DNA of 64,000 nucleotides from positions 682,001 through 746,000 of the forward strand of contig JAUPSS010000008.1 in the NCBI GenBank assembly GCA_040285825.1. Direction: 5' to 3'. The position numbers were made by a program, and so were the translations under genes. The first letter of the stretch is position 1. Each line of letters starts with the position of its first letter. The notes beneath the pieces were generated by a model. It was not told where the DNA came from. It ran no database searches and saw only the letters and a program-made list of their open reading frames with translations. Shown here in pieces: positions 4,892 through 55,286 of this stretch. This stretch comes from Eukaryota sp. TZLM1-RC (lineage: Eukaryota > Protista > Metamonada: BaSk clade).

Positions 4892-7051
4892 GAGACTGAC
4901 TAAATCCAAAACTAGTTACAAAATTGACTAGTTACAAAATCAATCTCGCTGCACTGTTTCCACGTCTGTTTGCCAACACATGACGTCACATCCCTCACTG
5001 TTAGAAACAATCCCTGCACCCCTACTCTCCTCCACCTGTCGTGATTCCCTTATCAATGCTATCAAGGCATGGGGTTTCCGAGAAGGCTTCGTCCTCTACA
5101 TCTCTGCCTCTACCAGTGATATCTTCACTTACCTCCATTGTACCCAAGGTCAGTTTTCTAGTGAAGTTCATTCGGTCCGTGATGAAATCTCTGCAGAAAC
5201 TCATGATTTTGTAGACTATTCTAAGTCAACAAAGCCAGATTGTACGTTCAGAGTTTATTTATCAATGGAGAACAGCATTTGGAAGGTCAAAAGTAGTGAC
5301 AGAACACATAACCATCCGAAACTCCCTAACCTATCAGGATATTCTGGATATTGGCTCTGGGGGGCCCAACAACATATGGAGGAATTACACTGATATTTTG
5401 TAATCCCGAGCAACAGAATGTTGAGGAAGAATCACAAGAGCAGTCAGAATATGATGTGGTGTTGAATGAACTGCATGTGCTTTCAGAAACCAGCAAGGTG
5501 ATGATTCTCCCAAAGTTGAAAGAACTTCTAGATATTGGCTTGAAAGGTCCACAACCACCTGTTGTTGCAACAAAGCGTACAAGAGATAGACCACCAGGAT
5601 CGAAGAATAAGCAAATTAGACAAAGGAGAGACCAATCGTTGTTTGAGCATGTAGAAGACAGTCATCAGTAGTTAGGGTTGGGCACTGGGTTAACTTAGTC
5701 CGTTAACGTTCAACCAAACTAAGTTTTAGTGCACTAAAGACTGAAATTTCCTTAGTCTAGTTTTAGTTTCTGGTCTAAAATCTATTTATCCGTTGATGAA
5801 AAAAGTTATTGAATTTGTCAACAAAGCCAGATCATCATCAAATAACACAAATGTTCCACGAACTTCAAATGGGAAATTGGGAAGAAGAAAAATCTCTCAT
5901 CAACGATGTATCCACCAGGTGGAATTCTACTTATCTAATGATAAAAGTATATAAGGAACAAATCCGGCATGTGACGAACATTCTGGTTGAGAACAATAGA
6001 TTTAACTTAATTATACAACGAGAACGAGCTAGTTGTCCTGGACGATATTATCGGTCTCTTGAAGCTGTTTTATGACGCGACTGTCACTTTATCTGAGCAG
6101 AACAATCCGACTATTGCCCTGGTCTAAACCATTTTAGACCACTTAAATACACATTTGCTGAACTTTTATTCATCAAACTCCGCTGAATGGCTTGTCACAG
6201 CTGTGAACAGTATGTGTGACAAGTTTCAAAGTTATATTGTTTTGTTGTATGACTTCTCAGCTTATGCAGGCACAGTACTGGACCCACGTTTTAAAAGACC
6301 AGATGCGTCTTCGTTACTTCATAGAAGTGAGTTTGAAGTGCAGTTGAAATCGCTAGTGTCTCAAAAGCAGCAACAGGAGAATCAACAATCAAGAAATGTA
6401 TCTCAAAAGGTCTCTTTTCTTCAAAAGTTGCAACTCGAGAAAGGTATGAAATGTAGTGATGAACTGGAGAGGTACCTGAACGAAGGTCCCATCGATTGGT
6501 GTGAAAATCCAATTTTGTGGTGGAAAACCAATGAAAGTAGATTCCCTTCAGTAGCTTCCGCTGCAAAAGACCTTTTTGCTATACAGCCCACATCAGTACT
6601 TTGTGAACGAATGTTCTCGATTGCAGGAGATGTTGTTTCTGCCAAACGAAACAGATTGTCTGATGACATGGTTAGAAATCAATTGTGCCTAAAATCATGG
6701 TTGGAAAATGATTTTGATTTGAATATGGAATAATTATTTATTTGTCAGTATTTCTAATAGTAGTTTTTTTAATAAATTGTTTTTTGTTTTTTCATATTAG
6801 TCTTAGTTTAGTCCAAGTTAGTCCGAGCTTAGTTGAGCGTTAGTACACTAACATCAAGATTAGTTCAGCCTTAGTGCGACTAAGATGTGTATAATGTAGT
6901 TTTAGTGCAACTAAAGTACTTTGAAGTTTAGTGTTAGTACGTTAACTTTTGCCCAACCCTATCAGTAGTCAACAGTAAAATGCTGTTTATAAGAAGAGAA
7001 TGATTTTGTATCTAGTCAATTTTGTAACTAGTTTTGGATTGAGTCAGTCTC
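4892..7051 (+). mobile_element. Internally deleted Mutator-like (MULE) DNA transposon
   Basis: ~51-bp TIRs (GAGACTGACTAAATCCAAAACTAGTTACAAAATTGACTAG.. at 4892, inverse ending at 7051); 8-bp TSD TAATTTTA (4884-4891, 7052-7059); FAR1-like C..R...W.V...HNHP ORF at 4980-5393 and C-terminal RPPGSKNK..RRDQSLFEHVE ORF; DDE core missing. Confidence 0.88.
5673..6961 (+). mobile_element. Internally deleted hAT DNA transposon nested in the MULE
   Basis: 12-bp TIRs TAGGGTTGGGCA / TGCCCAACCCTA; 8-bp TSD TCAGTAGT (5665-5672, 6962-6969); DVSTRWNSTYLM, LDPRFK and hAT dimerisation domain WWK..RFP...QPTSVLCERMFS. Confidence 0.95.
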
Positions 7052-9703: not shown

Positions 9704-9914
9704 GTTTATATTAGCTTTGTGACTAAACAATCTTGTACATGATATTTTTTGCCCAATTCCAATACCAATTCCTCTTTCAGAGCTGTTTGAAACTTTCTAC
9801 TTAAAAAGCAATCTGGAAGCAATTAGTCAAACAACAGAGACAAGACATGTAAAAATGAAAAGAAAACATAAAATTGGATGATGGAGATCTATATTTACAC
9901 ACACAAAACAAACA

Positions 9915-10790
9915 CTAATTCTTGAAAAAATCATGACTAAGGGCCTCAGTAGCAGTAATTCTTTGAGATGGATCATAATGAAGCATGCTCTTCAGAAGAT
10001 CAAGTCCTTTGTCATCCAATCTGGGGCAAATTTCGTGAAACGGACGTCCAACACGGACAGGCCATTCATTTGAGTACTTTGGAAGGTTCGTAACTCCTGG
10101 CCATAGATCAGGAGTTGGGGTGCCAAGAGTCTCAAAAATGAGGTTTAATTGAGAGTCTACAGACTTACCTGGGAAGAGGGCATTTCCATTGACGAGTTCC
10201 GCAAAGATACATCCAATAGAGAACATGTCTATGGAAGGGCCATATCGGAGGGCTCCACATAAAAGCTCAGGAGACCTATACCATAAAGTCACCACCTCGT
10301 GAGAATATGACTTGACAGGAATGCCATAGCTCCGAGCGAGTCCAAAATCAGCAATTTTGAGACAGAGCTGATCGTTTGTGTGGCAAATCAATAGATTTTG
10401 AGTTTTAAGATCACGATGAAGTATTTTGTTCAGGTGGACAGTCTCAATACCCTGCAATAGTTGCTTCATTAGTAGTTTGATAGTGTCTATATGAAGAACT
10501 CCATCATGTTGGTCAAGGAACTTACGTAAATCTGTATCAGCATATTCAAAGACAAGAAGCAACTTCCTATCACAATGGAGAACATCTTCTAGTCTAACAA
10601 TGTTGGGATGTCGAATGTCTTTCAAGAGGGATATTTCACGTATAGCCGAAGACGGTATACCTTCATCATCATTGGTTAGATTGATGACCTTGAGTGCGAC
10701 TGTTTTCTGATTTGTAACATCAAGGCACTTGTACACCTTACCATAAGTACCTTCACCAAGTTTTTCAAGGTGTTGAAAGCGTTCAGCCAT
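9915..10790 (-). CDS. Cyclin-dependent kinase (CDK1/2/5-like, PSSAIRE)
   Basis: GEGTYG, PSSAIRE, HRDLKTQN, DFGLAR, HEVVTLWYR; first ATG at 10790. Confidence 0.95.
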   Translation of the reverse strand: MAERFQHLEKLGEGTYGKVYKCLDVTNQKTVALKVINLTNDDEGIPSSAIREISLLKDIRHPNIVRLEDVLHCDRKLLLVFEYADTDLRKFLDQHDGVLHIDTIKLLMKQLLQGIETVHLNKILHRDLKTQNLLICHTNDQLCLKIADFGLARSYGIPVKSYSHEVVTLWYRSPELLCGALRYGPSIDMFSIGCIFAELVNGNALFPGKSVDSQLNLIFETLGTPTPDLWPGVTNLPKYSNEWPVRVGRPFHEICPRLDDKGLDLLKSMLHYDPSQRITATEALSHDFFKN

Positions 10791-11217
10791 ATAGTAGTAG
10801 TTGACTGATGTCAAGTAATAGTGGGAAAGGAAAAATAAATTTTATCTATTTTTGGACAAAAGTGACAAGCATTATAATATATTTACAATTACTCACCTGT
10901 TGAACTGTAAACAATTTATAACCTTTAGAAGCAAGGTTGATGATGATGTAAGAGAGCAATTATAATGTATATGAAAGTCTCATAGAAATGAAGCTTTTTC
11001 AAACCTCTGTTGTCAAATTTATTTGATGCTGAAAATGATTTTCTTAAGAATAATAGATATAATGTTATTCCACCTGGATTAGATGGAACCTTTATTTTAG
11101 TGAATGTGATATCTGTGGACCCTGCAATGTTTCTAATAAAAGATTAGCTAGTTCTGAAGTTCGAGTCTCCTTTCAAATGCTGAAAATCTCAAAATCAAAC
11201 AATAAGGTGAATGTTCG

Positions 11218-11353
11218 TGTTGTACTGTGGACAATTAGTCTAGTACATTTATATTTATATAACATAGTTCACTAGTGATGGCCTTTATAAGGGCCGGTGA
11301 AATTCTAATAAATTATTCCTTATTCTTTGTTATCATATATGGATAGAGCATCA
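11218..11353 (+). repeat. 5' LTR of the gypsy element
   Basis: 136 bp, identical to 18012-18147. Confidence 0.97.
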
Positions 11354-12760
11354 TTAATTAATGGCTTGAATAGCCACAATGATAACCCTCCTTCCTCTCT
11401 GAGGAAGAGTAATGTCCCTTCTTTGAAGGAGAACAATCCACCGCCCTCGGTGAGTAATCCTCCACTTGCGGAGAGTAGTCCTTCCTTCGGGAAGAGTAAT
11501 CCTCCAAAGGAGAGTGAGCTTTCCGCTGAGAAGAGCATTGCCTCTCAGAAAGAAAGCCACCTCCTCAATAAGGAGAGTGAACTTCGCACTGAGGAGAGCC
11601 CCACCTCCCAGAAAAGAAGTCACCTCCCTAATACGGAGAGAGGTAACCACGTTGTTGATGTGTCAGAACTATACACATACCCCGACAACTCCTCGGAGCT
11701 CCTTCCTTGTAGGAAGAGTTTTCTCACTCCGAGCGAGCAACGGAGATTCAAAGCGTTTGTTGTAAGTACGAAATCTGACGCTTGTACAGAAGGTGAAGGA
11801 GGTGAAGGCGAGCAACAGCCTACGACTGGCTCCTCACGTAAAACTCCCTCCTCACCTACTTCTGACATCAGCTCAAGTGAGGAACCTCAAAGTGATTCCA
11901 GAGGATCTCTTAATCAGAACTACAGCAGGAGAGGGGATGAGAGCGATGATGAACCACCTCATACACCCAATCCTCCTAATCCAACTCCCAGTTTCCCATC
12001 TACGGAAAGGACTTCTCAGGGTCTTTACCGCAGGAAATTAGCAAAGGCAGTTGAGGCTGTAACTAGAGATTTCTTATTGGACCTCATCGCCAATCCTCCC
12101 GAAGATATACTGGATTGGAGTGATGACGAATTATTAAAAATGGCTGAGAATGAGTCAGAGCGTCTTGCGGGAGACGTAGACCCAGCCGAATGTGAGAAGG
12201 TGCGACGTGACTATTTAGCGAAACGTTGGCCCTTCCTCTTTGGGGAAGCCCACGGCAAAACACTTGACGACGTCGTCTACGAGAGTTATGATCAAAGTCC
12301 AAATCTTTTAAAGAGATTGGATGATCTTACCGATTCGGCAGTCTCGTGTGGAATGAGTGCAGTCGAGGATTGCTATTTTAGCGCACCTCGTTCAAAGTAT
12401 CAAGCTGCTACTCCCAGGCCTGCCAAATGGCATAGGGATGCAATTGATGACCACAAAATATATTTCAGTGGAAATCAAGAAGCTTACGACAGACTATTTT
12501 GGATAGCTAAAATGTATCCTCATAATCAACAAGGTAGAAACCTTAGAGGCGTCGTAAGGCATTTCCTAGTGGAGAATGTACACCCAAAAGATTCCATTGC
12601 GGACATTCTTATTATGCTTGGGGGCAGATTCGATGAATCTCGAGGTGACACCCTTCAATTTCATACCAAAGAGTCCTATATTAGAGAAATAGGCACAAGG
12701 GTAATTGAATTGAAAGAGCAACGTGTTGGCCCCAACAAGTTAAAAACTAGTATACCCTGA
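11339..12760 (+). CDS. ORF1 of the gypsy element: low-complexity S/P/E-rich repeats plus an unknown domain, upstream of gag
   Basis: Intact ORF whose ATG lies inside the 5' LTR; KSNPP/KESEL repeats; no gag/pol motif. Confidence 0.55.
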   Translation: MDRASLINGLNSHNDNPPSSLRKSNVPSLKENNPPPSVSNPPLAESSPSFGKSNPPKESELSAEKSIASQKESHLLNKESELRTEESPTSQKRSHLPNTERGNHVVDVSELYTYPDNSSELLPCRKSFLTPSEQRRFKAFVVSTKSDACTEGEGGEGEQQPTTGSSRKTPSSPTSDISSSEEPQSDSRGSLNQNYSRRGDESDDEPPHTPNPPNPTPSFPSTERTSQGLYRRKLAKAVEAVTRDFLLDLIANPPEDILDWSDDELLKMAENESERLAGDVDPAECEKVRRDYLAKRWPFLFGEAHGKTLDDVVYESYDQSPNLLKRLDDLTDSAVSCGMSAVEDCYFSAPRSKYQAATPRPAKWHRDAIDDHKIYFSGNQEAYDRLFWIAKMYPHNQQGRNLRGVVRHFLVENVHPKDSIADILIMLGGRFDESRGDTLQFHTKESYIREIGTRVIELKEQRVGPNKLKTSIP

Positions 12761-12767
12761 TGCATGG

Positions 12768-14067
12768 ATGGCTAAACTTAAGGCATGGGTTGATAGCTGG
12801 CCCGACCAAAATGTTTTTGAGAATGTCTTAATAAAGAGCAGTTGCCTTCCATATGATCATAAACTAGCAGGGGTCCCTAGAGGATCTAAAGATGCACCAG
12901 ATTGGGTGGATTTAAGACCACCAGCCCAGACTGTACCTGTGCAGGAGGAACCTCCTAAGACAAGATTTATCATTAAGTTGGGCGAAACATTGCCTTCAGA
13001 AGAGAGGAATATGAACCTATATAGTACACCTTCTGTAGGGCCTCTGGCATCTAGGAGAGCTTCTTGTGAAGCAACTCCTACACAAGCATCTGTTATAAAA
13101 TCATCTATACCCACGCAACCCCTAGGAACGAATGCTCCTAGAGATTCTCTCGTCGACACCCTCGGTCTTTATAGAACTCATGTAACAGACGAGGAGAAAT
13201 TGAGGAAAAGAATAGACGACAAACTGAGATGCCTAGTTAAGTTAAATGAAGCGTTTGACGCCAAGAAGATCTTCGACTTCGTTCTTAACTTTGGCAATTG
13301 GGCTAAAACAGTTAGGGATCGCGATGGACCCACCAGAGCATTTACGCCGATCACCAAATACGGTCAACCTGTTCATCAGTACGACTTCGTTAGATCTATG
13401 TTCTTCGAAGTGGACCCTTTGTATTTGAGATTTATGATTGAGGGTAAGGTCATCGCAGAATGGCAGAGTTTTTATGGAGGCCGAACAAACGTGTTAGGCA
13501 ACAACCCATCTGACGCCGAAATCTGGGAATATTTGCTACTCAGCACCCAGTACAAATACCCTACCGATGTTGAGAAGGCTTTAAGGTCTGTAAGACCACC
13601 TGAGATCAGTCGCAAAATGACTGCTGAATCTTCGTGGACAGCCTTCATAGAGCAGATCATATATATAATTCGACGCTCTACAATTATGCCTGGAACGGAT
13701 GGTAATCCGTCTGTCGTCTACCCAGCAAAGAGATTTCTCGAAACTATTAACGACAAAACAAAACAATCAATTGATGGACACATATATCATTTGGATTGGC
13801 AAGTTTGATTCAAGTAACGAGAAACTGGGCGATGCGATTTACGATTTAGGTAACGCATTTGTTAACAAGGTCAATAGCCTTGAATCCTCGATCAAAGACA
13901 TGAATTTGATAAGAACAGCTTTTGGTGCTCACGCTCCTGCGCAAAAAGGACGAAGCCAGTCAAAAGGTCCTTTTAAGAACCCTAGAGTAAGCAGTCGACC
14001 CATCCCTTCAGAGCAATGGTGTAACTTATGTAAAACCAATAAACATCCTGAAGAGAAATGTTTTTAA
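12768..14067 (+). pseudogene. Gag (capsid region + CCHC nucleocapsid), frameshifted
   Basis: ORFs 12768-13808 and 13699-14067, ending in WCNLCKTNKHPEEKC. Confidence 0.7.
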
Positions 14068-14205
14068 ATTAGTGGGAAGACCTGGTTCAAAAAAGCGTCA
14101 AGGAGGTGAAAGACGTGATAGAAAAAAAATAGTAGTAATAAATCAGATGATTATACATCTTTAAACAATAACCTTACAAATAATTCAATCAAATCCATTT
14201 ATAAA

Positions 14206-17200
14206 ATGAGCAAAACAGATTCGAATTATAATCACCTAAATCCATTAAAAAGATTTAGAGAGTCATCCAATCCTGTGGGTTCTATCCACAGTGTTAGACT
14301 ATCCAGGGTAGCAGAGGACCAAGAAAGTTCTAACGGGGAACTTTGGTTAACCTGCACCATAAATAACGTGGAAGTACAAGGCGAAATTGATAATGGAGCT
14401 GCATTTTCAGCATTATCAATGGATTTAGCCTCTAAATGTAATATGACAGTTAATTACAATAAGACTGTCGAATACTTATCGGCAAATGGTATTCGCTCCA
14501 CGACCCTGGGATGTGCAAGTGGTGTTCTTGCTCTAAATGTGGGTAGCTTGGCCACTCAAGTGTTTTTAAGGATCGAATTCCAGATCATTCCTGGTACCAA
14601 TAATTTTTTGATCGGAAGAGACTTATTACAAACCTTGGGGCTACGCACGGAGCACGGTTTTAATATTAATTTGGATCACGAACATCGCACCATCTTAAAT
14701 GCTGAATGTGAGTTCGATAATAGAATTTGTCAACCAATTAGATTCATTGAACAATTGAGTAATAAATCAGACTTAGGTAATGATTTTTGGGCATTCCACA
14801 TTTAGACATGAGTTAGATGAGTTGGGCTGTAGAATACGCCTGGATGACATTAGGGACGAGGAACGCCTAGTCGTGCTACTCGAAAAATATAGAAATGTAT
14901 TTAGTGGGCTACCTCACCCGGATGGAATTGATTGTCAGCCGATGACCATTCCATTTTATGACGAAAGTAAGGTCGTCAAAAGGAAACCTCGAAGATTAAA
15001 CCCAGAAAAACAACGGGTAGCCGAGGAAATTTTTAACGAATTGATCCGTAATGGATTTGCTGTGCCCGCAAAGTCTCAATTCAGTAGTCCCATCTGTCTT
15101 GTGATTTACCCTGATCACAGGAAACCACGATTAACTGGCGATTTTAGTGGTATTGGTGGAGTAAATGATTTAACTAAACCTGTAGAGGCAAATTTGCCCA
15201 GGATTAGCGACATTTTAGAGTTTCTAAGTAAAGCTAATTATATAGCAACTCTAGATTTACCTAAGGCATTTTGGCAGCTCAAAAATTGCAGAAGAGGATA
15301 TTGATAAAACTACCGTATCATTTCCCGGGATGTCGATCAGTTTTAAAAGGGCTTGTTTTGGTTTGAAGAACGTTCCTGCAGTCTTCCAAAAACATGATGA
15401 TGGAAATATTTGATTCTGAGGGCGTATTTATTTATATCGATGATATAATAATAGTAGCTTCGACCCTGGATGAATTTCTATCTAGAGTAGGTACGGTCCT
15501 AGAACGCGCCAAACGTTTTAGAGTTAACCTTGGCCTACCCAAGTGTAGCTTTACCACTTGCAAACATGAAATAAAAATTCTAGGTAGTATTTTTGTAAAC
15601 AAAACCCGTTATATAGATGAATCTAGGATTGAGGGACTGATCAACCTACCCAAACCCAGGACATTACCTGAGGTTAGGAGTTTTATAGGTTCGATTAATT
15701 ATATACGTGACTGGTCGCCAAACTTGTCTGATTTGATAGAACCAATCAACAAATTAACCAGAAACAAACCGTCAAAGATCAAGTGGACTTCTGATCATGA
15801 CGAGGCTTTTGGTAAGATTATAAATCTTATCAAAGCAAATATCCCTCTTGAATTGCCCTCAGAAGACAAGCATATTTTAATAAGTGCTGATGCGTCTGAT
15901 GTGGCTGTAGGTGGAGTAATATGGCAAGAAGCTAACCCACCTAAAGATCCTACGACACCGCTAATTAAGAGAAAGGTTGTACCAATTGCCTTCTTTAGCA
16001 GATTATTATCAACTTCACAAAAGAATTGGTCTGTACTTCAGAAAGAGTTGTATGCAATTTTACTAATTCTCACTGACAGTAGTTTAGAAAATTATTTAAT
16101 TTCGAGGAAATTAACTATTTTCACTGATCATAGAAATTTAGCATACCTTATATCAGCTCCTGAAAAGAACAGAATTGTGAAGAGGTGGCTACCAATATTG
16201 TCAGAATTCAATTTTGATGTAGTCCACACGGCAGGCGAGGAGAATTATTGGGCAGACATGTTGTCTAGATTGGTTGATACCAAACCCAAAACCCCTCGAG
16301 TCCAACAAGTGAGAAACTTGGCACCTCACAGAGTTGAAGAACAATTACCCTATTTAAATTTATTAACTAGAGTTAATTTGTTAAGGGATGAAATTACTCA
16401 ACCGTCCACAATTGAGCTACCCACGATCAATAGCTTATCTGCACTGAAAGAAGCAGTTGAGGATACTAAATTTGATTTATTTGACACTTGGATCTCAAAG
16501 ATTAGGCAAGAACAACTTATAGATGTTGATTCAAATCCTGATTATTACAAAGATTACAATTATAATTCAGATATTCAATTGTATACCAACAATCGTGGGA
16601 AGATTGTTATCCCAGATAGTTTAAAGAAGCAGACTTTAACTATCATTCATGGACATGCAAATGTTGGCCATCCTAGTGTGACGACTAGCGTAAAGAAATT
16701 ACTCAATAGTGATTACTTTTGGCCCGACATGCGCAAAGACATGCTTAATCATATTAAGAGATGCCCAGCATGTCAAAAGACGGCACATGTGCCTAAAAAA
16801 GTCATTGAATCATCTGGCTCTCTTTGGGCTGATCGACCTTTTGCACGATTAAACGCAGATACTATTGGACCATTACAACAAGATGATAATGGATTCAAAT
16901 ATTTAATAGTTTTCGTAGATTCGTTCACTAGGTATACGATCATTTGCCCTGTAAAGGAATTGAATGCAGTGGAGGCAACCAACCACCTCCTATGGAGTGT
17001 AGTATCAATTTTTGGTATCCCACTGTTGATTCATAGTGACAATGGTATTGAATTTGCAAATACCATATTCAAAGGGTTATGCGATTTATTGAAGTAAATT
17101 GAAGTAACATTGAAGTAAGTCGTTCACTAACTAGCTTTTCACAAAGCAATGGTTTAGTAGAAAGACGACACAGAGACATCCTACAAAGTCTAAGAAAGAT

Positions 17201-18011
17201 TTTGGTGGACTCTGGCGATTATAGCAATTGGAGTGAATATATCCCAATTGTACAACTTCAAATCAATTCAACTATTAGTACTTACATTCGTTACTTACAT
17301 TCGCCCTACAATTTAATGTTTGGTAGCGACCACAGCCCTAGAGCTGATCCTAGTAATATGTTTGAATTAATAAAATCAGCTAATGTTAATATTCCCTTTG
17401 TTAAAGATCTTGAAGCAAAACTTGAAAGGATTTCAAAGAAGAGAGAAGAGGCAGAGCTCAGGCAAGCTCAACAACTGCCTGAAGTTAACAAACATAGGAA
17501 CCCTTTTAATAAAGGTGACTTAGTTTTGCGATTAAAGACTAATGGTAAACTCCATGGTTGCTTCGCTGGCCCTTTTCTCGTTGAAGAAGTTAAACCCAAT
17601 AAAAGTTTATTACTCAAGAATCTTGTCACTGGTTCGATGTCTACGGCAAGTATAAATCATTGTAAACTATACCTTTCAGACTTCCCTAAAGAAGATCTTG
17701 ATTGGCATAAGAATATTGCTGCTGGCGATATGGAAGAATCTGTAATCGTTAAAATTATAGATCACTTTGATTACGTAGATTCGAACAATAATAAAGTTCC
17801 TTATTGTACCGCAGTTTGGTATGGCGGCGAGACTTCGTCTGTCCCAGTTGCTGACGTCAAAAGCACTGAGGCATATCAAACATATTTGCGCTCTATTAGT
17901 CCTCACACTACCAGGAAACGGAAGGTATCTTCTAATTCCAAATCTAAGACTAATTCCCCTGCAGTCAGTACTCGTAGCTCTCGTTCAAGATCTAAGAGAG
18001 GGAAAAGGTAG
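14206..18011 (+). pseudogene. Pol (PR-RT-RNase H-IN-chromodomain-like), broken into 4 ORFs
   Basis: DNGA, LDLPKAFWQ, YIDD, DASD, HPS..CPAC, NADTIG, HSDNG, NGLVERRH, AGPF, IVKIIDH...VWYG. Confidence 0.92.
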
Positions 18012-18147
18012 TGTTGTACTGTGGACAATTAGTCTAGTACATTTATATTTATATAACATAGTTCACTAGTGATGGCCTTTATAAGGGCCGGTGAAATTCT
18101 AATAAATTATTCCTTATTCTTTGTTATCATATATGGATAGAGCATCA
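18012..18147 (+). repeat. 3' LTR of the gypsy element
   Basis: 136 bp, preceded by a PPT. Confidence 0.97.
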
Positions 18148-18806
18148 TTTGTCCACATTGTCTATCCAACAGCATGCAAAATACAATTTGTATCCATTTG
18201 TTTTTTTCTTTTTGGTTCACTTGGACCGCTTTACGGTCTTTGGCAGATTTTGAACTTATTGTTAGAAGAAGGACCAGTAGAAATTTGAACTGGTTTTGCT
18301 GGCAGAATAGAATTGTCTATGAATATAAATGTCTAAGGGGATGTTGAAGGTGGTTTCTGATGCAGTGCTTTCTCTTGCATCACACCATGAGAGAGTTGGT
18401 TATAAATCAACATCTACACAATCCATCTCTCCCAAAACAAACAACTATAAGCTGTTCAACAAATATATTCATTTAAAAAAAGTTACATTGTGTGGACTAC
18501 AATTGTGTTCCGTTGTTAAATATTCTCATGTTGTACCTTTCTTTGTGAATTCGGATTTATCTAACAGATTAAGATACATTTACTTAATTGTTCAGCGTAT
18601 TCAAAACAGAAATCTTTTTTAGTAATCAGACAAAATGCTGCAGTAATCGAAGTTTATCTGGTTATAATAATGCAAAAACAAGTAATTAGTAATTGAGTTG
18701 CAAAGAACCATATGTAATGTAATTTGAGAAAAAATGAAGCTAAACAAAACACAGCAGGTAAAGTAACTCTAAAATAAAACAATTCTGCTTAATAACCAAG
18801 TATCAA

Positions 18807-25139: not shown

Positions 25140-27770
25140 TCAAAAAATTCAAATTTTAAAAAGAAAAGTTGGTAAGAAAACTTGCTTTAAAAGGACGTTT
25201 TGGTTCTGCAAAGCAATATTTATTTTCTTCCAAGTTAGCTGAATGCAATGAAAGTATGCTGTCACAATTGAATAGTCTTCATCCAGAAGAAAATTTTCAT
25301 TGTCCCAAATCAGATTCAGTTGATTATTGGTTGAAACATCCTGTGAATGTTCCAGAGGTCGTAACACTCATTCATCAAATGCCTGCTGGAAATGCTCCAG
25401 GAAATCCAGGGGGGGTCCTGAAATTGTTGATGATCTCGTCTATTTTTTCAACAGTCTTTTGACCTTGAAAATTAAAGTTCCTCGTGAGATGATAATGTTC
25501 GTTTAATTGCCCTCAAGAAAAATCCATCCAAAGTTTGTCCAATAGCAATGGAGAATCGTTCGCCAGAATTCTTGCTTCCCCTCTTTTCAATAGAATTGGG
25601 AAAAAAGCCAAAGAATTTTTCAGCCCGTTTCAACTTGAAAACAAGACAATTAATGGTGCTTCAGCTGCTGCCCTTTCGTCTGATGTATTTTTTAATTCTA
25701 GTAATTCTATTTACATCTTTAATTTAGATTTTAAAAATGCTTGTAATTCTGTATCACGTTCGTCCACTTTCCCTTTGTTGCAAAAACATTTTCCTGAGCC
25801 GAGTCTTCTTTCTATTCATTTTATGGAAAATCATCAACATTGTTCTATGAAAACTTTGACCAGTTTTCTTCTTCAGGTGTTAAACAGGGCGATCCACTTG
25901 GTCCTTTTTTCTTTTGTTTGGCAATTCATCCTTTGATGTGTGAATTACAAGAAAAATTGACAGAAAATGATATAGTAGCATATATGGATGACATTTCTGT
26001 CATTGCACTTATTTCAGTTTAAAAAAATGGCAAATAGATTTTGTTCAACTGATGCCGTAGGTTGCGAAAGTGGTTGAGATAAAGAAAAAAGCGAATGAGG
26101 AAAAGTTGATTTATTTTTCAATCATAACATATAAGCCTTAGGGCGCCAACACTGCTTCTTCCCTTTTTCAAAATAAATCAGCTAATATGAATATGAAACA
26201 AAACTATAACAAATAACTAAATAACTATAAATACTAAGAACTAAATACTGAATTCTACTGTTTTCTATTGTCTACAATTATCTTTGTAGTGATTGGGATT
26301 CACACAAACAGTGGGTTGTACATTTTTAAGATCGACAATTGATGTACTATGACTCTCCCAGGACAATGTTAGTATAAGGTAGTAAGCAATAACTGAAAAG
26401 GGCCTCGTTCCAAGATCTGTGTGTTTGAATACTTTTTTGTGTATGTTATAATCGCTACATAAAGATGCTCTGCTCCTTCCCTTTTTCGTAAACGAGAAAC
26501 GTGGTAGTGTCGTTAAGTAAAGGTATCATGGAATCGAAGAATGGATTCGCTGATAATTATGCAGTATCTATGTTGGATCAAAAACAGCAGTAAGCACAGT
26601 AACAAACCTCAGAAACCCGAAGGCGGCGTCTTTTGTTGTTGAAGTACTGGCTTTACGACTAAAAATATCAGAGGAGCAAGGACCGTATCTTTGCATTGTA
26701 GTACAATAACAGTGGAGGTGGAGTTTCTACTCGTAACTTCGTATTTGGTCGATTTTTCTCGTGTTTGGCTCCATAATAAAGGAAGCTGCTCGAATGGATA
26801 AGAGTCCACTGATTCGAAGTAAGGCTCCGCGTCCTTGTTAGAAGTTTGTAGAATCCATCACTGGAGTCATCTTCCTGTCTTTGGAATTTGCTTCAATAAA
26901 GGAGGGAACTGCTCAAACAAACAGTAATCTGTAGGTTCGAGGTGAGTCTCCGCATCCTTCATGATTTGTTGGCGAAGTTCTTTCTCATCGTCATTCAGTT
27001 CGTCTCAAACGGACTAAAGTTCTTCATATCCTTAAAGGACTGTCGAGGTTTCAGAACTTGAACCAACATTTGCGTTCTTTGGTAAGAAGGGGGGTGGTCC
27101 CATTCCTGAACCCTTTTATGGCATTAAGTTGGACTTGGAAGAGGCGGGAGGAAGTTTTGTGCCTGTTTCCATCGGTTTTCCTTGAGGAGGGGCGGAGGAT
27201 GGTCTCGAGCCCGAGTACTCGATTTTACTAGTCTCTACTACTTCTCCTATTACTACTGTTTGTATGCTAATTGCATCCCTGTTATGTTCCTGCATGTTAG
27301 TTTTAACGGTGTCAGTGTTTTGGCTGAAAAGGACTGACATGATATCTGCTAGAGATATCCTCTGTAGAAAAGCTGTGTGTTATCAAAGTGGTATACCTAT
27401 AACCTAAATGGCCAATAATTATTGATGCCGTAGGTTGCGAAAGTGGTTGAGATAAAGAAAAAGGCGAATGAGGAAAAGTTGATTTATTTTCCAATCATAA
27501 CATATAAGCCTTAGGGCGCCAACACAACAGCATTATGAAGAAATTGGTTTTTCATTGAATATCGCCAAAAGTCTGATTATTGGCCATGATCATATTGATA
27601 TTTTTATTAATGACGTCAACATCCCCTTTATCAATTACAATCAGTTTGGTTTTCGTTTTTTGGTTGTAATCGCGAAAATGTTGATGATGACAAAAGCCAA
27701 CTTTCGAATTTGTTGACTCAATTTGGAAAAGAATTAGAATCAATTGAGAATTTAAATATCGAAAAGGATT
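25140..27770 (+). mobile_element. Decayed non-LTR RT region interrupted by a small LTR element
   Basis: LDFKNACNSV, GVKQGDPLGP, AYMDD; the RT-like sequence resumes after 27528 (HYEEIGFSLN). Confidence 0.8.
26050..27524 (-). mobile_element. Small non-autonomous LTR element (TRIM/LARD-like) with no gag/pol motifs
   Basis: 102-bp LTRs at 26050-26151 and 27423-27524 (2 mismatches); 4-bp TSD CAAC; PPT on the minus strand AAAAAGGGAAGAAGCAG next to 26151. Confidence 0.92.
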
Positions 27771-28171: not shown

Positions 28172-31100
28172 TGATGAAAGTAATGTTTGTTCAAAAACGA
28201 AGACACGCTCTTACAGATGCTCAAAGTGTCGACAACAAAGACATAATGTTCGAACATGTCCCAATGTTTGAAAAAATGATGTGACAAATTCTGAAACAAA
28301 ATGCAAAAGAAAATTTGATAGAAGAACAGAATCTAAGGAAAAACCAATAAATGATTCTCCACAAGTTGTTGCAAAACCAGTCAACAATCGAATCAAGCAC
28401 AAAGTTTGCAACAATTGTGGTGTTTCTCTTAGGAAAAATGCAAAAGGTAAAACGGCTGATCGATGCATGAAATGCCCAATAGTCTATAATTACCATCCTT
28501 GCATAAAATATTTCAAGAAATTCATCCGTCAAAATGCAATGAATTTGCTTTTGTTTTTAAAAGATTTTTTTATCAATTATGCAAGGGAAAGTATGCTGTC
28601 AGTATTCTTTGGGAATTTTTTGGTTCTTTTTGTGCTCATTTTGAACAAAATATCGTAAATAATTCTGAAGATTTAATTAATATAGCACCGAGAAAACAGT
28701 CATCTGAGAAATTGGGTAAAATTTTTGAAGACAAATGCTTTGATAACAAATGGTCCAAGGCTTTGTCTGCTTTAAGTCCCGGACTTAAAGCTCCTAACAA
28801 TCAAGATACTATAGATAAACTGAAAATACTTCATCCATTTAAAGACCCAATAATGGATCAAAATTTTTACGGAAATTATTGGGAAAATTATCCATTAATG
28901 GCATCAGAGGTATTTTCAGTGATAAAAAAGAGACCACGCGGTAAGTCTGCCGGGCTTTTTGGTATTTCTATTGATCATATAAAAGCCGCAATAATTTCAT
29001 CAGAGGATTGTCTTGGTTTATAAATCAAATTTTTCAACAGAATATTGACTGGTCAACTCAAATATCCAGAAGAATTAGGAAGTTCTCGTTTGACTGCACT
29101 TGTCAAAAATTCAAAAATGAATGTTCGTCCTATTGCGGTTTCTGAGAGTATACATAATATTTTTTTCTGCTTGCTGCTTAAGCAGGTTCAATCAAAAAGC
29201 AAAAACGATTTTATTGTCCTTTCAATATGGAATGAATACCACTGATGGAGTTTCTTCAGCGATATTTGCTAAAGATGTATTATTTCGCCAAAATGAATCC
29301 AATGTTTGTATGTCATTGGATTTTAATAGTGCATTCAATTCACTCAGTCGTTGCAGTATTCATAATGCTTTGTTGCAATATATGCCGGAATTAATGCCGT
29401 ATTTTTAATCAAGATATAGCACAAATTCTAATTTGCATTTTGGTAATTCTATTTTGAGTTCATCAAATGGTGTAAAGCAAGGAGATCCGTTAGGACCTCT
29501 TTTGTTTTGTTTGGCCATTCATCCTATTTTATAACAAATTCAAGAGATGTAGCCTTCGCTAAAAATGATTGCATATATGGATGATGTTGTTCTTATAGGT
29601 GATTTAAATATTGTGAAAGAAGCAATTGTATGTTTTGAAAAATTATTTACCCCAATTGACATCCGACTTAATTTACTTAAATTTGTTTTGTTATCGAAAT
29701 CTACAGTTTCTACAAAAGTTGATGGCATTGAAATTTAAGCCAAATTATACTCAATTGATGCTATTCGTCATCTGGGTTCGTTTTTAGGAAATAATGATGA
29801 AATTACCAAAAAATAGTTTGAAAAGTTGAACTCAATTTTTGATAAAATTAACAGAATGATGACTTGAGATATACAGACACATATCAAATTTACCATTCTA
29901 AGACTGTGTTTCAGTTCCAACTTCAATCATATATTTTGATCTACAAATCCTCTTATCACTAGGCCTTTGGCTCAGAAGTTTAATGAGTTACGTGCAAAAG
30001 TTTTGTCACAATTACTGGGATGTAAAATGTTCCAAATTCCAGATTATGCCTATCTTAGTCCACATTATGGCGGTTTAGATTGGACGAAGGCTTTTATTCT
30101 TACTTCGTGTGCTTTTATTGGTGGATGCAGAAATGCAATATTTGAGTTTTCTGAAAGATTTGCAGATTGGGAAGATTTATTAATGACAAAGCAAAGTTCG
30201 ACTATTTTTGCATTAAATAAAGAAATTTCAAAAATTAATGTAGAAAAATGGAGTCGATGCTTCTTCCAATCATTCAATGGTAATATTCCTGAAAAGAATT
30301 TTTTAAATTTAAAATACACTCTTCGAACATTACAGAAACAATTGACTGGAATGTATGAAAATGATTTTTATAATAATATAAGCAGCTCAGATGTTTTAAA
30401 TCAAGATCTTCACTCATTGTTATTGGAAAAGGGTGTTTGTGAAAATAAGTCATCAGATTCTTCACTTTTTGTAACCATTGTACCACGAAGATTTGGATTG
30501 TGTGCCACTAATGAAGCATTTGAAACAAAAATGGAATTATATTTGAACATCCCCATTAACCAATTATTATCAAAAGAAAAATGTATTTGTTCGAATTCAC
30601 CTCAACTCACTTTGCGCCATGCTCTAAATTGCTCTAAATTGATAACTTATCGTTCTTCATTACATGATGCTGTGAGAGACATTGTTTTCAATATGGCACA
30701 AACTGCAGGAAAATCGTATGTCAAAGAGCATCTGCTGAAGGAAACACTTTCTCTGAATAATTTTGGTTCTGATGACAGAAGTGATGTATACTGTAATTGG
30801 ATTGATAATTCTGAAGCTATTGTTGAGTTTGTCTCATGTAATGTTGCAAATGATACATTGGTTCACAGAAGAAAACTTAATCCTGTAAGTGCCCTTGATT
30901 TTAAAGCAAAGGAAAAACATAGAAAATATGATAAAGATATTGAAGAGGCTAATGCTGATAGAAATACACAGCTGGTATTTATTGCTTTCCTATATTCGAT
31001 AAACGGAAGATTATCAGTTGAAGCAGAAACTTTTTTGAATGATTTCTAAAAGATGGTTCAAGAAAAAACAATGAAAAGATTTGATATTTTTTTATGGCGT

Positions 31101-31275
31101 TCTCGAATTCAAATTGCCATTATTAATGGATCACCTTGGTTTTTCAATCGAATAAGAGGAGCTTTAGCTAGACAGCAAGCAGATAGATTTTGTAGAGAAA
31201 ATCTTGGTTCAATGATATTCGTCCCATTAGTTATGAATTAATTTAATTAAGTGTGCATGTTCAATAAATATTTAT
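28172..31275 (+). mobile_element. Near full-length decayed non-LTR retrotransposon, subfamily C (zinc knuckle - RT - CCHC - REL endonuclease; CRE/R2-like)
   Basis: CSKCRQQRHNVRTC (~28218), VRPIAVSE, LDFNSAFNSL, GVKQGDPLGP, AYMDD, CIC..H.LNC, LHDAVRD, RSD/RGD..; AATAAA/T-rich end; many stops. Confidence 0.9.
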
Positions 31276-31289
31276 TTTTTATATAAATT

Positions 31290-42195: not shown

Positions 42196-43143
42196 TAATT
42201 TTCCTTAGCCAATCTAAGATGTACAAAAGAAAGGTGCTAAAGGTGTTATTCTAAATTTTTTCCGGCAATGCATATGAGAAAAAAGTGAGTAAATATTGTG
42301 AAATTTTAGGATTAAAGAGAAAAAGCTCACCAATTTCCTTTGATGAAAAGGTGATCTTATCACTTGAGATTAGTAAGGAAGCAGTGGAAATAAATTTTTG
42401 ACAAAGATTCAAAATAAAATTACATGCATTTAATAAAAAAATCTTTTTCTTGAATTATTAAAATGGAAATTGGTGTACCGTTCAAGAATAGAATCAACAA
42501 CTACTTGATCGGGTTGCTCACCTTCTGTTATTACACTAGCTTCTAGAGGTGCTGAGGGTTCATCTGGTATAAGGGACAGAACATAATTGGCAAAAAAAAT
42601 CCATTTATCCAGGCTCTACAATGAGTACGAATGAAGCTTTTAGTCCAGGGTTGACATATTGTAGGTAAACTTGTCTTAACTTTAGTTGCCAATTGACAAG
42701 CTTGACAAACAAGGTAAGGAGAAAGTCCTTTTCTATTAATAGAAATGCATCTTTGCCCCTGCAGCCACTCATTGAGAAAAATAGTGAATGAATTTCTATA
42801 GGGAACTAGATAATTTTCCCATGTAGAAACAAGAGCCCTGTCTTGTGGGCATTCATAATTCTTGTATCCAGCAAATAAACGTTGAAACACAAGAAAATGA
42901 TCAAGCAACTTAGACAGCAGCATCACATTGATAATGATCAAGAAACAAAATTCTTTCTTTTATAGTAATGATCACATTCCAACATTGGTGGAAATGATTG
43001 TAACACTTTTCCAAACAATATTTCAACAATCATAAATTTTTGAGGTCTTGACAACAGCTGTGAACCATGATGTCATACGAAGTAGCTTATTTGAGCTTGT
43101 TCAAAAGAGAAACTTTATTCACAGACTAATTTACTACAATAAA

Positions 43144-45341: not shown

Positions 45342-45628
45342 TCAAGAAGGTTCAAAAGCTGAAAAGAACAAATACGCATAAGGATGAATCCTTAAGGAGG
45401 AAATCAGAAGAATTCATCTGGTGACCATGAGTGACAAAACTGAGTGATTTGTTTTACGTGTTTTGATAGTTCTTAAAACCTACTGAGCGATTTTCCCATC
45501 GAATGAATCAATTAGGCCAATAAGCATTAGTAATTTTTGTACTTATGAGTAGCTGACATGTGTGATTATTTGAATCAATGTTAACCAGATAATTGAATTA
45601 TGATCTGCACCCTATTTTTTTCAGGACT

Positions 45629-46823
45629 TGTTAGATGTTGGATAACATCAAATCACGTGTGATGACGTGGCGATAGTTTAAGTTTAGTATTTGTAATTTA
45701 ATAAAGCTTTTCCTTTGGTCACTGCAGTGGAAACCAACAATAACGTTATTGTCCCTGTCCCTGTCCTTGTCCCTGTTTCAGACCCGTCACTGTTCTTGTA
45801 ACTGCCTTTGGTAAAGCCGTGCGATGCGTCCTGTCCACCGTCCCTATCTGACCTCGCTGTCCGAGGAAGATGTATGTATGTTTTTAAGCGAGTTTGAAGT
45901 GTATCAGTCTGTCACTGATAGCACCAAAGTTGTTTCCTTAAGGCTCTCTGTAGATCCCTTCATTTTGAAGTCCTTAGAGTTGTATGAACCTAAGGTGAAG
46001 ACTTCCGATAGTGTGTTGCTCAACTATTTGAAATCGCTGAACAATTTTCCGTCCTATGAAGCTGTCAACCAGACGGTCTCTCGGTTGAAAATGAACGTGA
46101 AAATCCCTAGTGCCAGAGAAAGAATGAATGATTACCTCAGAAACTTTCTGAAGGTGAAGGAAAAGGCTGAAGGCCTCGCCATTCCGAATAATGTTTTCAT
46201 GAAACGATTTGCTGCTGGTATTGCTCATAAAGGTCTAGCTGAATCCCTTGTGTCCCGTATTAATGACCAACTGTTACCTGATTTCAAAACCCTTGTGAAA
46301 GTTGCTACCGACGAAATTGTTGACCATGATAGATCTAAAGTTTGGTCAGGATCCATATCTAATACAAGTACTCGTTCTGCCGTCAGAGATACAGATATTG
46401 CTGCCAAAACTTGTTACAGATGCCATAAGCCTGGTCATATTGCTGTTAATTGTCCTCTTCGCAATGGTACTGCCCAAACTTTTGATGTCAAAAGATCCGC
46501 TCATGCTCATAGTATTAGAGAACTAGAATAGGTGAACACTGTACTTTGTGCTGTTAATGAAGCAGATATCAATAACTGTTCTGACTCATGCCTTGGAGAC
46601 GCGCTGAATATTTATGATAGTGATTCTTCAGAAGAAGAGCCGTATGAACTTGTACTCAATCCATTAACAAGGATTTCCCCATCACTGAAGAAGAAGAGTG
46701 AAGAAGGGGTAGTGTTAGATGTTGGATAACATCAAATCACGTGTGATGACGTGGCGATAGTTTAAGTGTGGTATTTGTAATTTAATAAAGCTTTTCCTTT
46801 GGTCACTGCAGTGGAAACCAACA
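45629..46823 (+). mobile_element. Gag-only LTR element (TR-GAG-like), 1195 bp
   Basis: 111-bp LTRs at 45629-45739 and 46713-46823 (2 mismatches); TSD GACT; PPT GAAGAAGGGGTAG; no pol. Confidence 0.95.
45824..46531 (+). CDS. Gag with CCHC zinc knuckle
   Basis: Intact 235 aa ORF containing CYRCHKPGHIAVNC. Confidence 0.85.
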   Translation: MRPVHRPYLTSLSEEDVCMFLSEFEVYQSVTDSTKVVSLRLSVDPFILKSLELYEPKVKTSDSVLLNYLKSLNNFPSYEAVNQTVSRLKMNVKIPSARERMNDYLRNFLKVKEKAEGLAIPNNVFMKRFAAGIAHKGLAESLVSRINDQLLPDFKTLVKVATDEIVDHDRSKVWSGSISNTSTRSAVRDTDIAAKTCYRCHKPGHIAVNCPLRNGTAQTFDVKRSAHAHSIRELE

Positions 46824-46884
46824 GACTGATTTAGAGAGTATTAATGATCTCGGAAGCAAAAAGAGTGAAAGTTGAAAGTAGACG

Positions 46885-55070: not shown

Positions 55071-55286
55071 CCCATTAATCAATTATTATCAAAAAAATGT
55101 ATTTGTTCGAATTCACCTCATCTCACTTTGCGTCATGCTCTGAATTGTTCGAAATTGATAACTTAACGTTCTTCATTACTTGATGCTGTTAGAGACACTG
55201 TGTTTAATATGGCACAAACTGCAAGAATTTTGTGTATCAAAGACTCTGCTGAAGGAAACACTGTCATTGAATAATTTTGGTTCTGA

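What the first reader, a model, noticed from the sequence alone, without database searches (positions are those of the whole stretch)
11347..11366. Palindrome in place of a tRNA primer-binding site in all three two-LTR elements: candidate new self-priming mechanism
Seen directly: the terminal CA of each 5' LTR is the left arm of a perfect palindrome. Gypsy: CATTAATTAATG (11352-11363). Small element: CAATAATTATTG (27413-27424). Gag-only element: ACAATAACGTTATTGT (45737-45752). The three LTRs and the palindrome cores differ in sequence, so symmetry rather than sequence is conserved. Two extend with the same AT bulge (AGC-AT-pal-GCT, GGC-AT-pal-GCC). Established: a canonical PBS begins with TGG 0-3 nt after the LTR, and Tf1-type self-priming uses the transcript 5' end. 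Neither is evident here. Inference: cleavage before the TG followed by fold-back, or pairing of two genomic RNAs through the palindrome, would place a 3'OH exactly opposite the U5 CA and prime minus-strand DNA without tRNA. It could also serve as a dimerisation signal.
Basis: partly seen in the sequence, partly recalled or inferred. Interest (0 to 1): 0.88.

Follow-up and report, generated by a model that had tools for sequence, protein, structure and literature searches.

The report
Palindrome replaces tRNA primer site
In the protist Skoliomonas, every complete LTR retrotransposon examined has a perfect 12-16-base palindrome starting at the last bases of the 5' LTR, where a tRNA primer-binding site normally sits. 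This points to a tRNA-independent way of starting reverse transcription whose mechanism is unsolved; it has one published, equally unexplained precedent in fungal copia elements.

Summary
All three two-LTR elements in the window have a perfect palindrome that begins at the LTR-terminal CA. So do 11 further LTR/leader junctions in eight loci from three Skoliomonas genomes.

- **Palindrome types:** there are six. Three of the six base-pair positions show changes on both sides, and every centre is self-complementary.
- **Structure:** 3-4 bp stems flank the palindrome after a 1-3 nt bulge on the U5 side. An outer U5:leader stem covaries between families.
- **Canonical parts:** LTR ends (TG..CA), 4-bp target duplications and polypurine tracts are ordinary.
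- **What is absent:** no family-shared TGG site and no Tf1-type complement inside the LTR. The one host tRNA recovered, Arg-TCT, does not match.

My best reading (about 0.45) is that the palindrome is the primer-binding site, and that two copies of the element's RNA pair through it so that a cleaved copy primes the other. That step is inferred, not shown.

It is less new than claimed. Fungal GalEa copia elements have a published palindromic "Conserved Hairpin Site" at the same position (PMC5445492), also unexplained. Distant environmental gypsy contigs show the same architecture. The scan's first readers had noted the same palindrome on other pieces of this genome. No RNA run was listed.

The parts
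11218..11353 (+). 5' LTR of the Ty3/gypsy element (TG..CA, 136 nt)
   Evidence: 100% identical to 18012-18147. The internal ORFs carry protease, RT, RNase H and integrase domains.
11347..11366 (+). Core module of the gypsy element: stem AGC (11347-11349), bulge AT, palindrome CATTAATTAATG (11352-11363), stem GCT (11364-11366)
   Evidence: Read directly. Predicted as the apex of a hairpin.
11329..11386 (+). Outer U5:leader stem of the gypsy element: 11329-11336 pairs with 11379-11386, enclosing the module
   Evidence: 7-nt perfect complement found; 8-bp stem in the minimum-energy fold.
17994..18147 (+). Polypurine tract (17994-18011) and 3' LTR (18012-18147) of the gypsy element
   Evidence: Alignment of the LTR copies with their flanks.
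27423..27524 (-). 5' LTR of the small non-autonomous element (102 nt)
   Evidence: 98% identical to 26050-26151. The polypurine tract next to 26152 on the minus strand sets the orientation. Target duplication GTTG.
27401..27436 (-). Hairpin module of the small element: AACCUAC, GGC, bulge AU, palindrome CAAUAAUUAUUG (27424 to 27413), GCC, AU, UUAGGUU
   Evidence: Same module as the L003 and L011b gypsy families, with compensatory changes in the outer stem.
26050..26169 (-). 3' LTR (26151 to 26050) and polypurine tract (26169 to 26152) of the small element
45629..45739 (+). 5' LTR of the gag-only element (111 nt)
   Evidence: 98% identical to 46713-46823; target duplication GACT.
45729..45760 (+). 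Module of the gag-only element: GGA, internal loop, palindrome ACAATAACGTTATTGT (45737-45752), internal loop, UCC
   Evidence: fold z-score -2.3. The same palindrome is kept in the diverged copy L007:9926-9941.
45824..46531 (+). Gag ORF (235 aa, CCHC zinc knuckle) of the gag-only element
46687..46823 (+). Polypurine tract (46687-46712) and 3' LTR (46713-46823) of the gag-only element

Best explanation
**Shown.** The 12-16-nt palindrome is a conserved cis-acting, base-pairing element. It occupies the primer-binding position of a divergent Ty3/gypsy lineage in Skoliomonas, and of that lineage's non-autonomous and gag-only derivatives. It sits at the apex of a U5:leader stem structure with a small bulge on the U5 side.

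**Inferred.** Because the site is self-complementary, the only RNA known to carry a complementary 3' end for each of the six variants is the element's own RNA. Two copies of the genomic RNA would pair through the palindrome, extended by the flanking 3-4 bp. One copy would be cleaved at or 2 nt before the 3' edge of the palindrome, by analogy with the RNase H-dependent cut in Tf1. The new 3'OH would then prime minus-strand strong-stop DNA on the partner's U5-R. Copying the primer's last 10 or so nucleotides during plus-strand strong-stop synthesis would regenerate the right arm. That would supply the homology for the second strand transfer and keep the palindrome perfect in every generation.
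For: 1. **Position.** The palindrome begins at the terminal CA of the 5' LTR in 14 of 14 junctions. These are three in the window and eleven in L001, L002, L003, L005 (two), L007, L008, L009, L010 and L011 (two), from three species. Four-bp target duplications fix the LTR ends in at least nine of these elements. The offset scan peaks only at -2.
2. **Covariation.** There are six palindrome types. All cells are paired, three of six pairs change on both sides (A-U, U-A and G-C at pair 3-10), and 0 of 500 shuffles reach the observed score.
3. **Self-complementary centres.** The central four bases are AATT, TATA or ACGT in all six types. A hairpin loop would not need this; a full duplex would.
4. 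**Flanking stems.** Between L003a and L011b the outer stem changes from AACCUAA/UUAGGUU to GACUUUA/UAAAGUC, which is three compensatory double changes.
5. **Thermodynamics.** As monomer hairpins the folds are weak (z-scores -0.1 to -2.3). The self-dimer gains 7-15 kcal/mol.
6. **Retention in non-autonomous copies.** The 1.47-kb small element keeps only LTRs, this module and the polypurine tract.
7. **No shared tRNA-type site.** The 15-mers after the palindrome differ in all eight families. TGG is absent within 30 nt in two families. The positions where the tRNA T-arm invariants should pair do not fit. There is no match to tRNA-Arg(TCT).
8. **No Tf1-type primer in the LTR**.
9. **Everything else is canonical** (polypurine tract, TG..CA, target duplication), so only the minus-strand primer is unusual.
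10. **Recurrence elsewhere.** The same architecture occurs in distant environmental gypsy contigs (L061, L038, L062 and others) and in fungal GalEa copia elements (PMC5445492).
Against: - No RNA, cDNA or biochemical data exist. No RNA run was listed, so transcript ends, cleavage and primer identity are unobserved.
- The host tRNA set was not available; only tRNA-Arg(TCT) was recovered. A tRNA fragment or another small RNA is therefore not excluded family by family. TGG at +9 in four of eight families could still be a short Ty3-like site.
- The model needs an asymmetric cut, one RNA cleaved and the partner intact, and an RNase able to cut an RNA:RNA duplex. This is known only for Tf1 and is contested in vitro.
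- If the cut is at the palindrome's 3' edge, the LTR's CA would have to come from retained primer bases.
- The 12-bp AU-rich duplex is only moderately stable.
- Perfect symmetry could also come from strong selection for dimerisation alone.
- The sample is 14 junctions, not a genome-wide survey.
Confidence: 0.45

Rival explanations
1. The palindrome is only a dimerisation or packaging signal. It would be an extended-duplex dimer linkage of the kind seen in retroviruses and Ty1. Priming would be done by some host RNA, such as a tRNA fragment or another small RNA, that anneals to overlapping or adjacent leader sequence.
For: - Self-complementary centres and a large predicted gain on dimerisation.
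- Retroviral dimer sites are palindromes (PMC5874298, found; not read).
- The host tRNA set is untested.
Against: - Known dimer sites exist in addition to a primer-binding site and lie downstream of it. Here nothing else occupies the primer position.
- The adjacent leader covaries with U5 instead of being conserved between families.
- A dimer site has no reason to start exactly at the LTR's CA in 14 of 14 junctions.
Confidence: 0.25
2. Ordinary tRNA priming. The palindromic 8-10 nt are a structured spacer, the true primer site starts at the TGG/TGT that follows, and integrase trims an unusually long tail.
For: TGG lies at +9 to +11 in gypsy_w, the L003/small/L011b group, the L002/L008/L010 group and the L009/L011a group.
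Against: - Four families have TGT instead of TGG. L005a and the gag-only element have no TGG within 30 nt.
- The sequences after TGG share nothing beyond TGGCC and fail the conserved T-arm positions.
- In the L003 group they covary with U5.
- There is no match to tRNA-Arg(TCT).
- As far as I know, integrase removal of an 8-10-nt tail has not been described.
Confidence: 0.07
3. The palindrome acts at the DNA level. It could be a binding site for a dimeric protein (a host factor or integrase), a downstream promoter element that distinguishes the 5' LTR, or a snap-back hairpin at the cDNA end.
For: Perfect even-length palindromes are typical of sites bound by dimeric proteins. The element lies only beside the 5' LTR.
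Against: - Six different half-sites with compensatory changes argue against sequence-specific protein read-out.
- The flanking U5:leader stems with bulges and compensatory changes point to single-strand pairing.
Confidence: 0.1
4. Priming without a nucleic-acid primer. Reverse transcriptase would start de novo or on a protein at the conserved U5-side bulge of the hairpin, in the manner of the hepadnavirus epsilon signal.
For: A 1-3-nt bulge on the 5' side sits directly at the LTR end in every family and in the environmental relatives.
Against: - No terminal-protein domain was seen.
- The idea does not explain why the apex must be self-complementary.
- As far as I know there is no precedent among LTR elements.
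Confidence: 0.05

Closest known systems
[quoted passage not shown] 2017, PMC5445492)
   Same: - No tRNA primer site.
- A conserved palindrome directly at the primer position that includes the last base of the 5' LTR (A+CTGATCAGT or A+CTAATTAGT).
- Variation mainly at paired positions.
- A larger hairpin with a bulge or internal loop at the LTR junction.
- The authors propose a primer-site role; the mechanism is unknown.
   Different: - Here the superfamily is Ty3/gypsy and the host a metamonad.
- The palindrome is 12-16 nt and includes both bases of the CA.
- There is no CHSeq2 partner 12-41 bp downstream.
- Instead, nested U5:leader stems flank the palindrome.
Tf1/sushi self-priming (the 'pretzel' RNA structure; Levin 1995, Lin and Levin 1997, as summarised in PMC10085805)
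   Same: - Independent of tRNA.
- The primer would come from the element's own RNA.
- Duplexes between U5 and the sequence next to the primer site flank the site.
- An RNase H-type cut of an RNA:RNA duplex would be needed.
   Different: - In Tf1 the primer is the first 11 nt of the same mRNA and the site is not palindromic.
- Here no complement exists in the LTR, so the donor must be the same site on a second RNA.
- No chromodomain was detected.
Retroviral and Ty1 dimer-linkage palindromes
   Same: A self-complementary sequence in the 5' leader that can switch between a hairpin and an intermolecular duplex.
   Different: Those sites exist in addition to a tRNA primer site and lie downstream of it. 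Here the palindrome takes the primer position and overlaps the LTR end.
Skipper elements of dictyostelids (PMC5006619)
   Same: A protist Ty3/gypsy lineage that lost the TGG primer site, has no Tf1-type complement, and for which a new form of self-priming was suggested.
   Different: Skipper has a degenerate polypyrimidine tract, not a palindrome.

Membership tests
Ty3/gypsy LTR retrotransposon | Two LTRs ending TG..CA, a short target duplication, a polypurine tract before the 3' LTR, and domain order protease-RT-RNase H-integrase | tested here: met
   - LTR ends, target duplications and polypurine tracts.
- Domains.
- Target duplications are 4 bp.
Canonical tRNA-primed primer-binding site | TGG within 0-5 nt of the LTR end | tested here: not met
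   TGG is at +9 in four families and is TGT in four others. There is none within 30 nt in L005a and the gag-only element.
Canonical tRNA-primed primer-binding site | At least 8-18 nt complementary to the 3' end (or a half) of a host tRNA | tested here: inconclusive
   Only tRNA-Arg(TCT) was recovered from about 240 kb. The longest complement to it is 7 nt or less. The full tRNA set was not obtainable.
Canonical tRNA-primed primer-binding site | The same site sequence shared by related families that use the same tRNA | tested here: not met
   Eight families have eight different 15-mers after the palindrome.
Tf1/sushi self-priming | A site complementary (about 11 nt) to the mRNA 5' end inside the 5' LTR | tested here: not met
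   The only perfect complements of 7 nt or more are the nested U5 stems. The best imperfect matches are no better than shuffles (p = 0.13-0.88).
Tf1/sushi self-priming | Duplexes between U5 and leader that flank the site | tested here: met
   compensatory changes between L003a and L011b.
Tf1/sushi self-priming | Chromodomain at the integrase C-terminus | tested here: not met
   No Pfam chromodomain at E <= 1 in five C-terminal regions.
GalEa Conserved Hairpin Site | A palindrome at the primer position that includes the terminal LTR base or bases | tested here: met
   14 of 14 junctions.
GalEa Conserved Hairpin Site | A second conserved sequence (CHSeq2) 12-41 bp downstream, complementary to the first with one A/A mismatch | tested here: not met
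   The best downstream partners pair at only 7-10 of 12-14 positions, G-U included.
GalEa Conserved Hairpin Site | Membership of the Ty1/copia GalEa clade | tested here: not met
   Integrase lies after RNase H, which is the gypsy order. All homologues found are gypsy-type.
Retroviral dimer initiation site | A palindrome in a hairpin loop, present in addition to and downstream of the primer site | tested here: not met
   The palindrome overlaps the LTR end and no separate primer site is present.
Retroviral dimer initiation site | Mediates RNA dimerisation | not testable with these tools
   Only predicted: the dimer is 7-15 kcal/mol more stable than two monomers.

The most novel reading that the evidence does not exclude
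A third general way of priming LTR-element reverse transcription, beside tRNA priming and Tf1-type cis self-priming. The primer-binding site would be self-complementary, so two co-packaged genomic RNAs prime each other in trans. The dimer linkage and the primer-template complex would be the same structure, and the site would repair its own symmetry in each cycle. The mechanism would have been acquired independently or retained by Skoliomonas gypsy elements, many uncultured eukaryotes' gypsy elements and fungal GalEa copia elements.
Probability: 0.4. Interest if true: 0.85.

Novelty: new variant of a known kind. Interest (0 to 1): 0.68.

Why it matters
How minus-strand synthesis starts is a defining step of retroelement replication. 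Only tRNA priming (full or half tRNA) and Tf1-type self-priming are established.

A palindromic primer site has been noted once, in fungal copia elements, and left unexplained. Finding the same solution in a gypsy lineage of a deep-branching metamonad, with covariation and self-complementary centres, shows it is a recurrent and selected design rather than a curiosity. Distant environmental gypsy elements show it too.

It also gives a sharp, testable model: trans priming within the RNA dimer.

In practice, LTR annotation tools that require a tRNA-type site will miss or misjudge these elements.

Tried and rejected
- **RNA evidence.** The look-up of sequencing runs listed no RNA run for 45300-47100, so read laying could not be used. 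Transcript start, poly(A) site and any cleavage remain unknown.
- **Host tRNAs.** ARAGORN found none in the window or in L001-L005, L008 and L009. It found only three tRNA-Arg(TCT) genes, in L007. No tool reaches the rest of the eukaryotic assemblies.
- **Wasted look-ups.** The P0101 look-up returned the window itself (L006 = window 35824-56531). P0062 is not on record.
- **L004.** No LTR pair was found around the P0012 element.
- **Other palindromes.**
  - L001 CATACGCGTATG at 17631 and 18175 lie in a short inverted-repeat element, not at an LTR.
  - Window palindromes at 7917 and 49247 lie beside no detected LTR pair.
- **G-U pair in L009.** CAATACGTGTTG at first looked like RNA-level evidence. 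The sister copy L011a is perfect (CAATACGTATTG), so it is a post-insertion mutation in an old copy.
- **Second complementary sequence.** A CHSeq2-like downstream partner was sought and not found.
- **Cis fold-back priming.** Rejected on geometry.
- **Literature.** Searches for a 'palindromic primer binding site' found nothing. Other searches gave only the GalEa paper and one paper citing it.
- **PMC1369541** (Lin and Levin 1997) is not held.

Full report
**Source of the window.** The reverse-transcriptase/integrase ORF at 15394-17097 finds its closest relatives (up to 93% identity) in proteins of 'Eukaryota sp. TZLM1-RC'. Relatives at 40-55% identity occur in the same genome, in GEM-RC1 and in TZLM3-RCL. 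A look-up places the window on JAUPSS010000008.1 of GCA_040285825.1. These appear to be the free-living metamonads described as Skoliomonas (PMC11316075, PMC11603281); equating isolate TZLM1-RC with that genus rests on my memory, because the strain name was not found in the paper I searched. That paper does not use the word 'retrotransposon'. The host is a protist, not an animal or crop.

- LTR pairs are 11218-11353 / 18012-18147 (100% identical), 26050-26151 / 27423-27524 (98%) and 45629-45739 / 46713-46823 (98%).
- The small element lies on the minus strand. A polypurine tract abuts 26152 on that strand, so its 5' LTR is the copy at 27524 to 27423.
- Four-bp target duplications fix the LTR ends at TG..CA: GTTG for the small element and GACT for the gag-only element. 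The gypsy copy has TTCG/TTTG.
- In each element's own orientation, the sequence after the terminal CA reads TTAATTAA-TGG, ATAATTAT-TGG and ATAACGTTAT-TGT.
- All three have a canonical polypurine tract ending in (G)YAG just before the 3' LTR.
- The gypsy element encodes protease, RT, RNase H and integrase in gypsy order, and the gag-only ORF has a CCHC knuckle.

**The feature is clade-wide.** I fetched ten further loci from the three Skoliomonas genomes through relatives of the pol and gag proteins and located LTR pairs by self-alignment. I found no LTR pair around the asked-for element in L004, so it contributed no junction. Every two-LTR element has a palindrome beginning at the LTR's CA:

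| Palindrome | Where found |
|---|---|
| CAATAATTATTG | L001, L003, L005b, L011b, small element in the window |
| CAGTAATTACTG | L002 (two junctions of a tandem array), L008, L010 |
| CAATTATAATTG | L005a (two junctions) |
| CAATACGTATTG | L011a; its older relative L009 has one transition |
| CATTAATTAATG | gypsy element in the window |
| ACAATAACGTTATTGT | gag-only element in the window and its diverged copy in L007 |

- Target duplications (CAAG, TTTA, TTGG, TAGG, GAAG and TTAA twice) confirm the LTR ends.
- Across 14 junctions the 12-mer starting at the C of CA forms 73 of 84 possible pairs. Other offsets give 19.7 +/- 4.9.
- Aligned, the six distinct 12-mers are 100% paired. Three of six pairs change on both sides, and none of 500 shuffles reaches the observed covariation.
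- First-stage readers of other windows of this genome noted the same thing (s1-634023, s1-634102, s1-634035).

**Anatomy.**
- After a 1-3-nt bulge on the U5 side only (AT, AA, A or TAT), 3-4 further base pairs extend the symmetry: AGC/GCT, GGC/GCC, GTCA/TGAC, GACC/GGTC.
- An outer U5:leader stem follows. It covaries: AACCUAA/UUAGGUU in L003a becomes GACUUUA/UAAAGUC in L011b, which is three double changes.
- As monomer hairpins these structures are weak (z-scores -0.1 to -2.3). A symmetric dimer is predicted to be 7-15 kcal/mol more stable than two monomers.
- The central four bases, which would be the loop of a hairpin, are themselves self-complementary in all six types. A loop would not require this. 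It indicates a full duplex, meaning pairing between two copies of the site, or a process that generates symmetry.

**What it is not.**
- *Not a canonical tRNA site.* TGG lies at +9 in four families and is TGT in four others. Two families have no TGG within 30 nt. The 15-mers after the palindrome differ in all eight families and, in the L003 group, covary with U5. The positions that should pair with the invariant tRNA T-arm do not fit. The only host tRNA I could recover, Arg-TCT in L007, has no complement longer than 7 nt. The full tRNA set was out of reach, so this test is incomplete.
- *Not Tf1-type self-priming.* No sequence complementary to the site exists elsewhere in the LTR, either perfectly or imperfectly (p = 0.13-0.88 against shuffles). 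No chromodomain was detected.
- *Not cis fold-back.* This fails on geometry.

**Most likely mechanism (inferred).** In LTR elements the right LTR boundary is set by where the minus-strand primer sits, so whatever lies at the CA is by position the primer-binding site. Here that site is self-complementary and differs between families. No single host RNA could match all six variants, whereas each element's own RNA always does.

The simplest model has these steps:
1. Two genomic RNAs pair through the palindrome and its flanks.
2. One is cut at or just inside the 3' edge of the palindrome, as Tf1's RNase H cuts its primer duplex (summarised in PMC10085805).
3. Its 3'OH is extended over the partner's U5 and R.
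4. Plus-strand strong-stop synthesis copies the primer's last 10 or so bases, reproducing the leader's first bases. This gives the homology for the second jump and resets the palindrome to perfect symmetry each generation.

This accounts for the exact register with the CA, the perfect cores beside imperfect flanks, the compensatory variation, and the retention of the module in the 1.47-kb non-autonomous element. It remains untested. No RNA run was listed, so neither transcript ends nor cleavage could be examined.

**Comparison with what is known.** The literature search found one close precedent. Fungal GalEa copia elements lack a tRNA site and carry a 9-bp sequence (CTGATCAGT or CTAATTAGT) that is palindromic together with the LTR's final A. 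It has a bulge at the LTR junction and was proposed as a primer-site substitute of unknown mechanism (PMC5445492). Only one later paper cites it (PMC6934838). The Skoliomonas module differs in four ways:
- It belongs to the gypsy superfamily.
- It is 12-16 nt long.
- It includes both bases of the CA.
- It has no downstream CHSeq2 partner.

Dictyostelid Skipper elements are another protist gypsy lineage with an unexplained non-tRNA site (PMC5006619).

**Wider distribution.** A scan of metagenome contigs with the Skoliomonas pol alignment returned 80 distant gypsy loci at 23-31% identity.
- Where LTR ends could be placed, a perfect palindrome again sits at the junction:
  - L062: LTR ends GGGACA, then C, then TGTATATATACA.
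  - L038: AAAGAATTCTTT shares the terminal A.
  - L061: polypurine tract, a 167-nt LTR, then ACTGTAATTACAGT sharing the terminal A.
- Eleven of 49 windows just upstream of the first long ORF hold a perfect palindrome of 12 nt or more, against about 3.7 expected.
- Several fold into the same stem, 5' bulge, palindrome, stem arrangement.
- These contigs are chimera-prone and their target duplications do not match, so I treat this as supporting evidence only.

**Verdict.** The palindrome is a primer-site substitute. Trans self-priming is the best explanation but is unproven. The claim of a wholly new mechanism is tempered by the GalEa precedent. I rate it a new variant of a known, unexplained kind.

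Noticed in passing
L002:484-12601 and L005:7046-19757: Tandem arrays of the form LTR-internal-LTR-internal-LTR. The outer LTRs carry 4-bp target duplications (CAAG, TTGG) and the two units are 99.6-99.7% identical. Two arrays among about ten full elements seems frequent. Their origin is open: unequal exchange, or reverse transcription or integration of a dimer.
   Followed up: partly
window 45753-45782: Directly after the gag-only palindrome come four TGTCCC-like hexamers and then TTTCAG. This looks like the polypyrimidine tract and acceptor of an intron, and it fits earlier scan notes that an intron removes the LTR end and primer region from the gag mRNA. No RNA data were available to test it.
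   Followed up: no
L007:8781-12674: Three tRNA-Arg(TCT) genes lie around the diverged gag-only copy (9818-11243), about 0.5-1 kb away. There are no tRNA genes near the window's copy. This is possibly a tRNA cluster rather than targeted insertion.
   Followed up: partly
window 30435-31280, 40436-42202, 46889-47711, 53686-55907: Four copies (85-94% identical) of a 0.85-1.8-kb repeat. One has a 0.9-kb insertion and one an inverted partial copy at 54153-55071. The family was not identified.
   Followed up: partly
window 11214-11217 and 18148-18151; 11327-18011: The gypsy copy has 100% identical LTRs but an imperfect target duplication (TTCG/TTTG), and its coding region is split over at least seven ORFs. 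It may be a recombinant or gene-converted copy, or it may contain introns or frameshifts.
   Followed up: no
L002:590-615, L008:8466-8490, L010:6850-6875: In the CAGTAATTACTG families the right arm of the palindrome can alternatively pair with a conserved downstream hairpin (GGCCC-loop-GGGUC, then YAGUG), as in the minimum-energy folds. This could be a monomer/dimer switch.
   Followed up: no
L089:118-129 and 5700-5800: An environmental gypsy contig carries the same 12-mer, CAATAATTATTG, about 40 nt upstream of its gag frame. It also carries what looks like a chromodomain motif at the integrase C-terminus, read by eye only and not tested with Pfam. Its LTR end could not be verified.
   Followed up: partly
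L001:17578-18262: A short element with terminal inverted repeats and internal CATACGCGTATGG motifs. It resembles a miniature DNA transposon and is unrelated to the LTR palindromes.
   Followed up: partly
All Skoliomonas LTRs, e.g. window 11308-11314: Every 79-148-nt LTR has an AATAAA/TATAAA motif 35-60 nt before its end and a TATA-like run upstream. This implies very short R and U5 regions.
   Followed up: no
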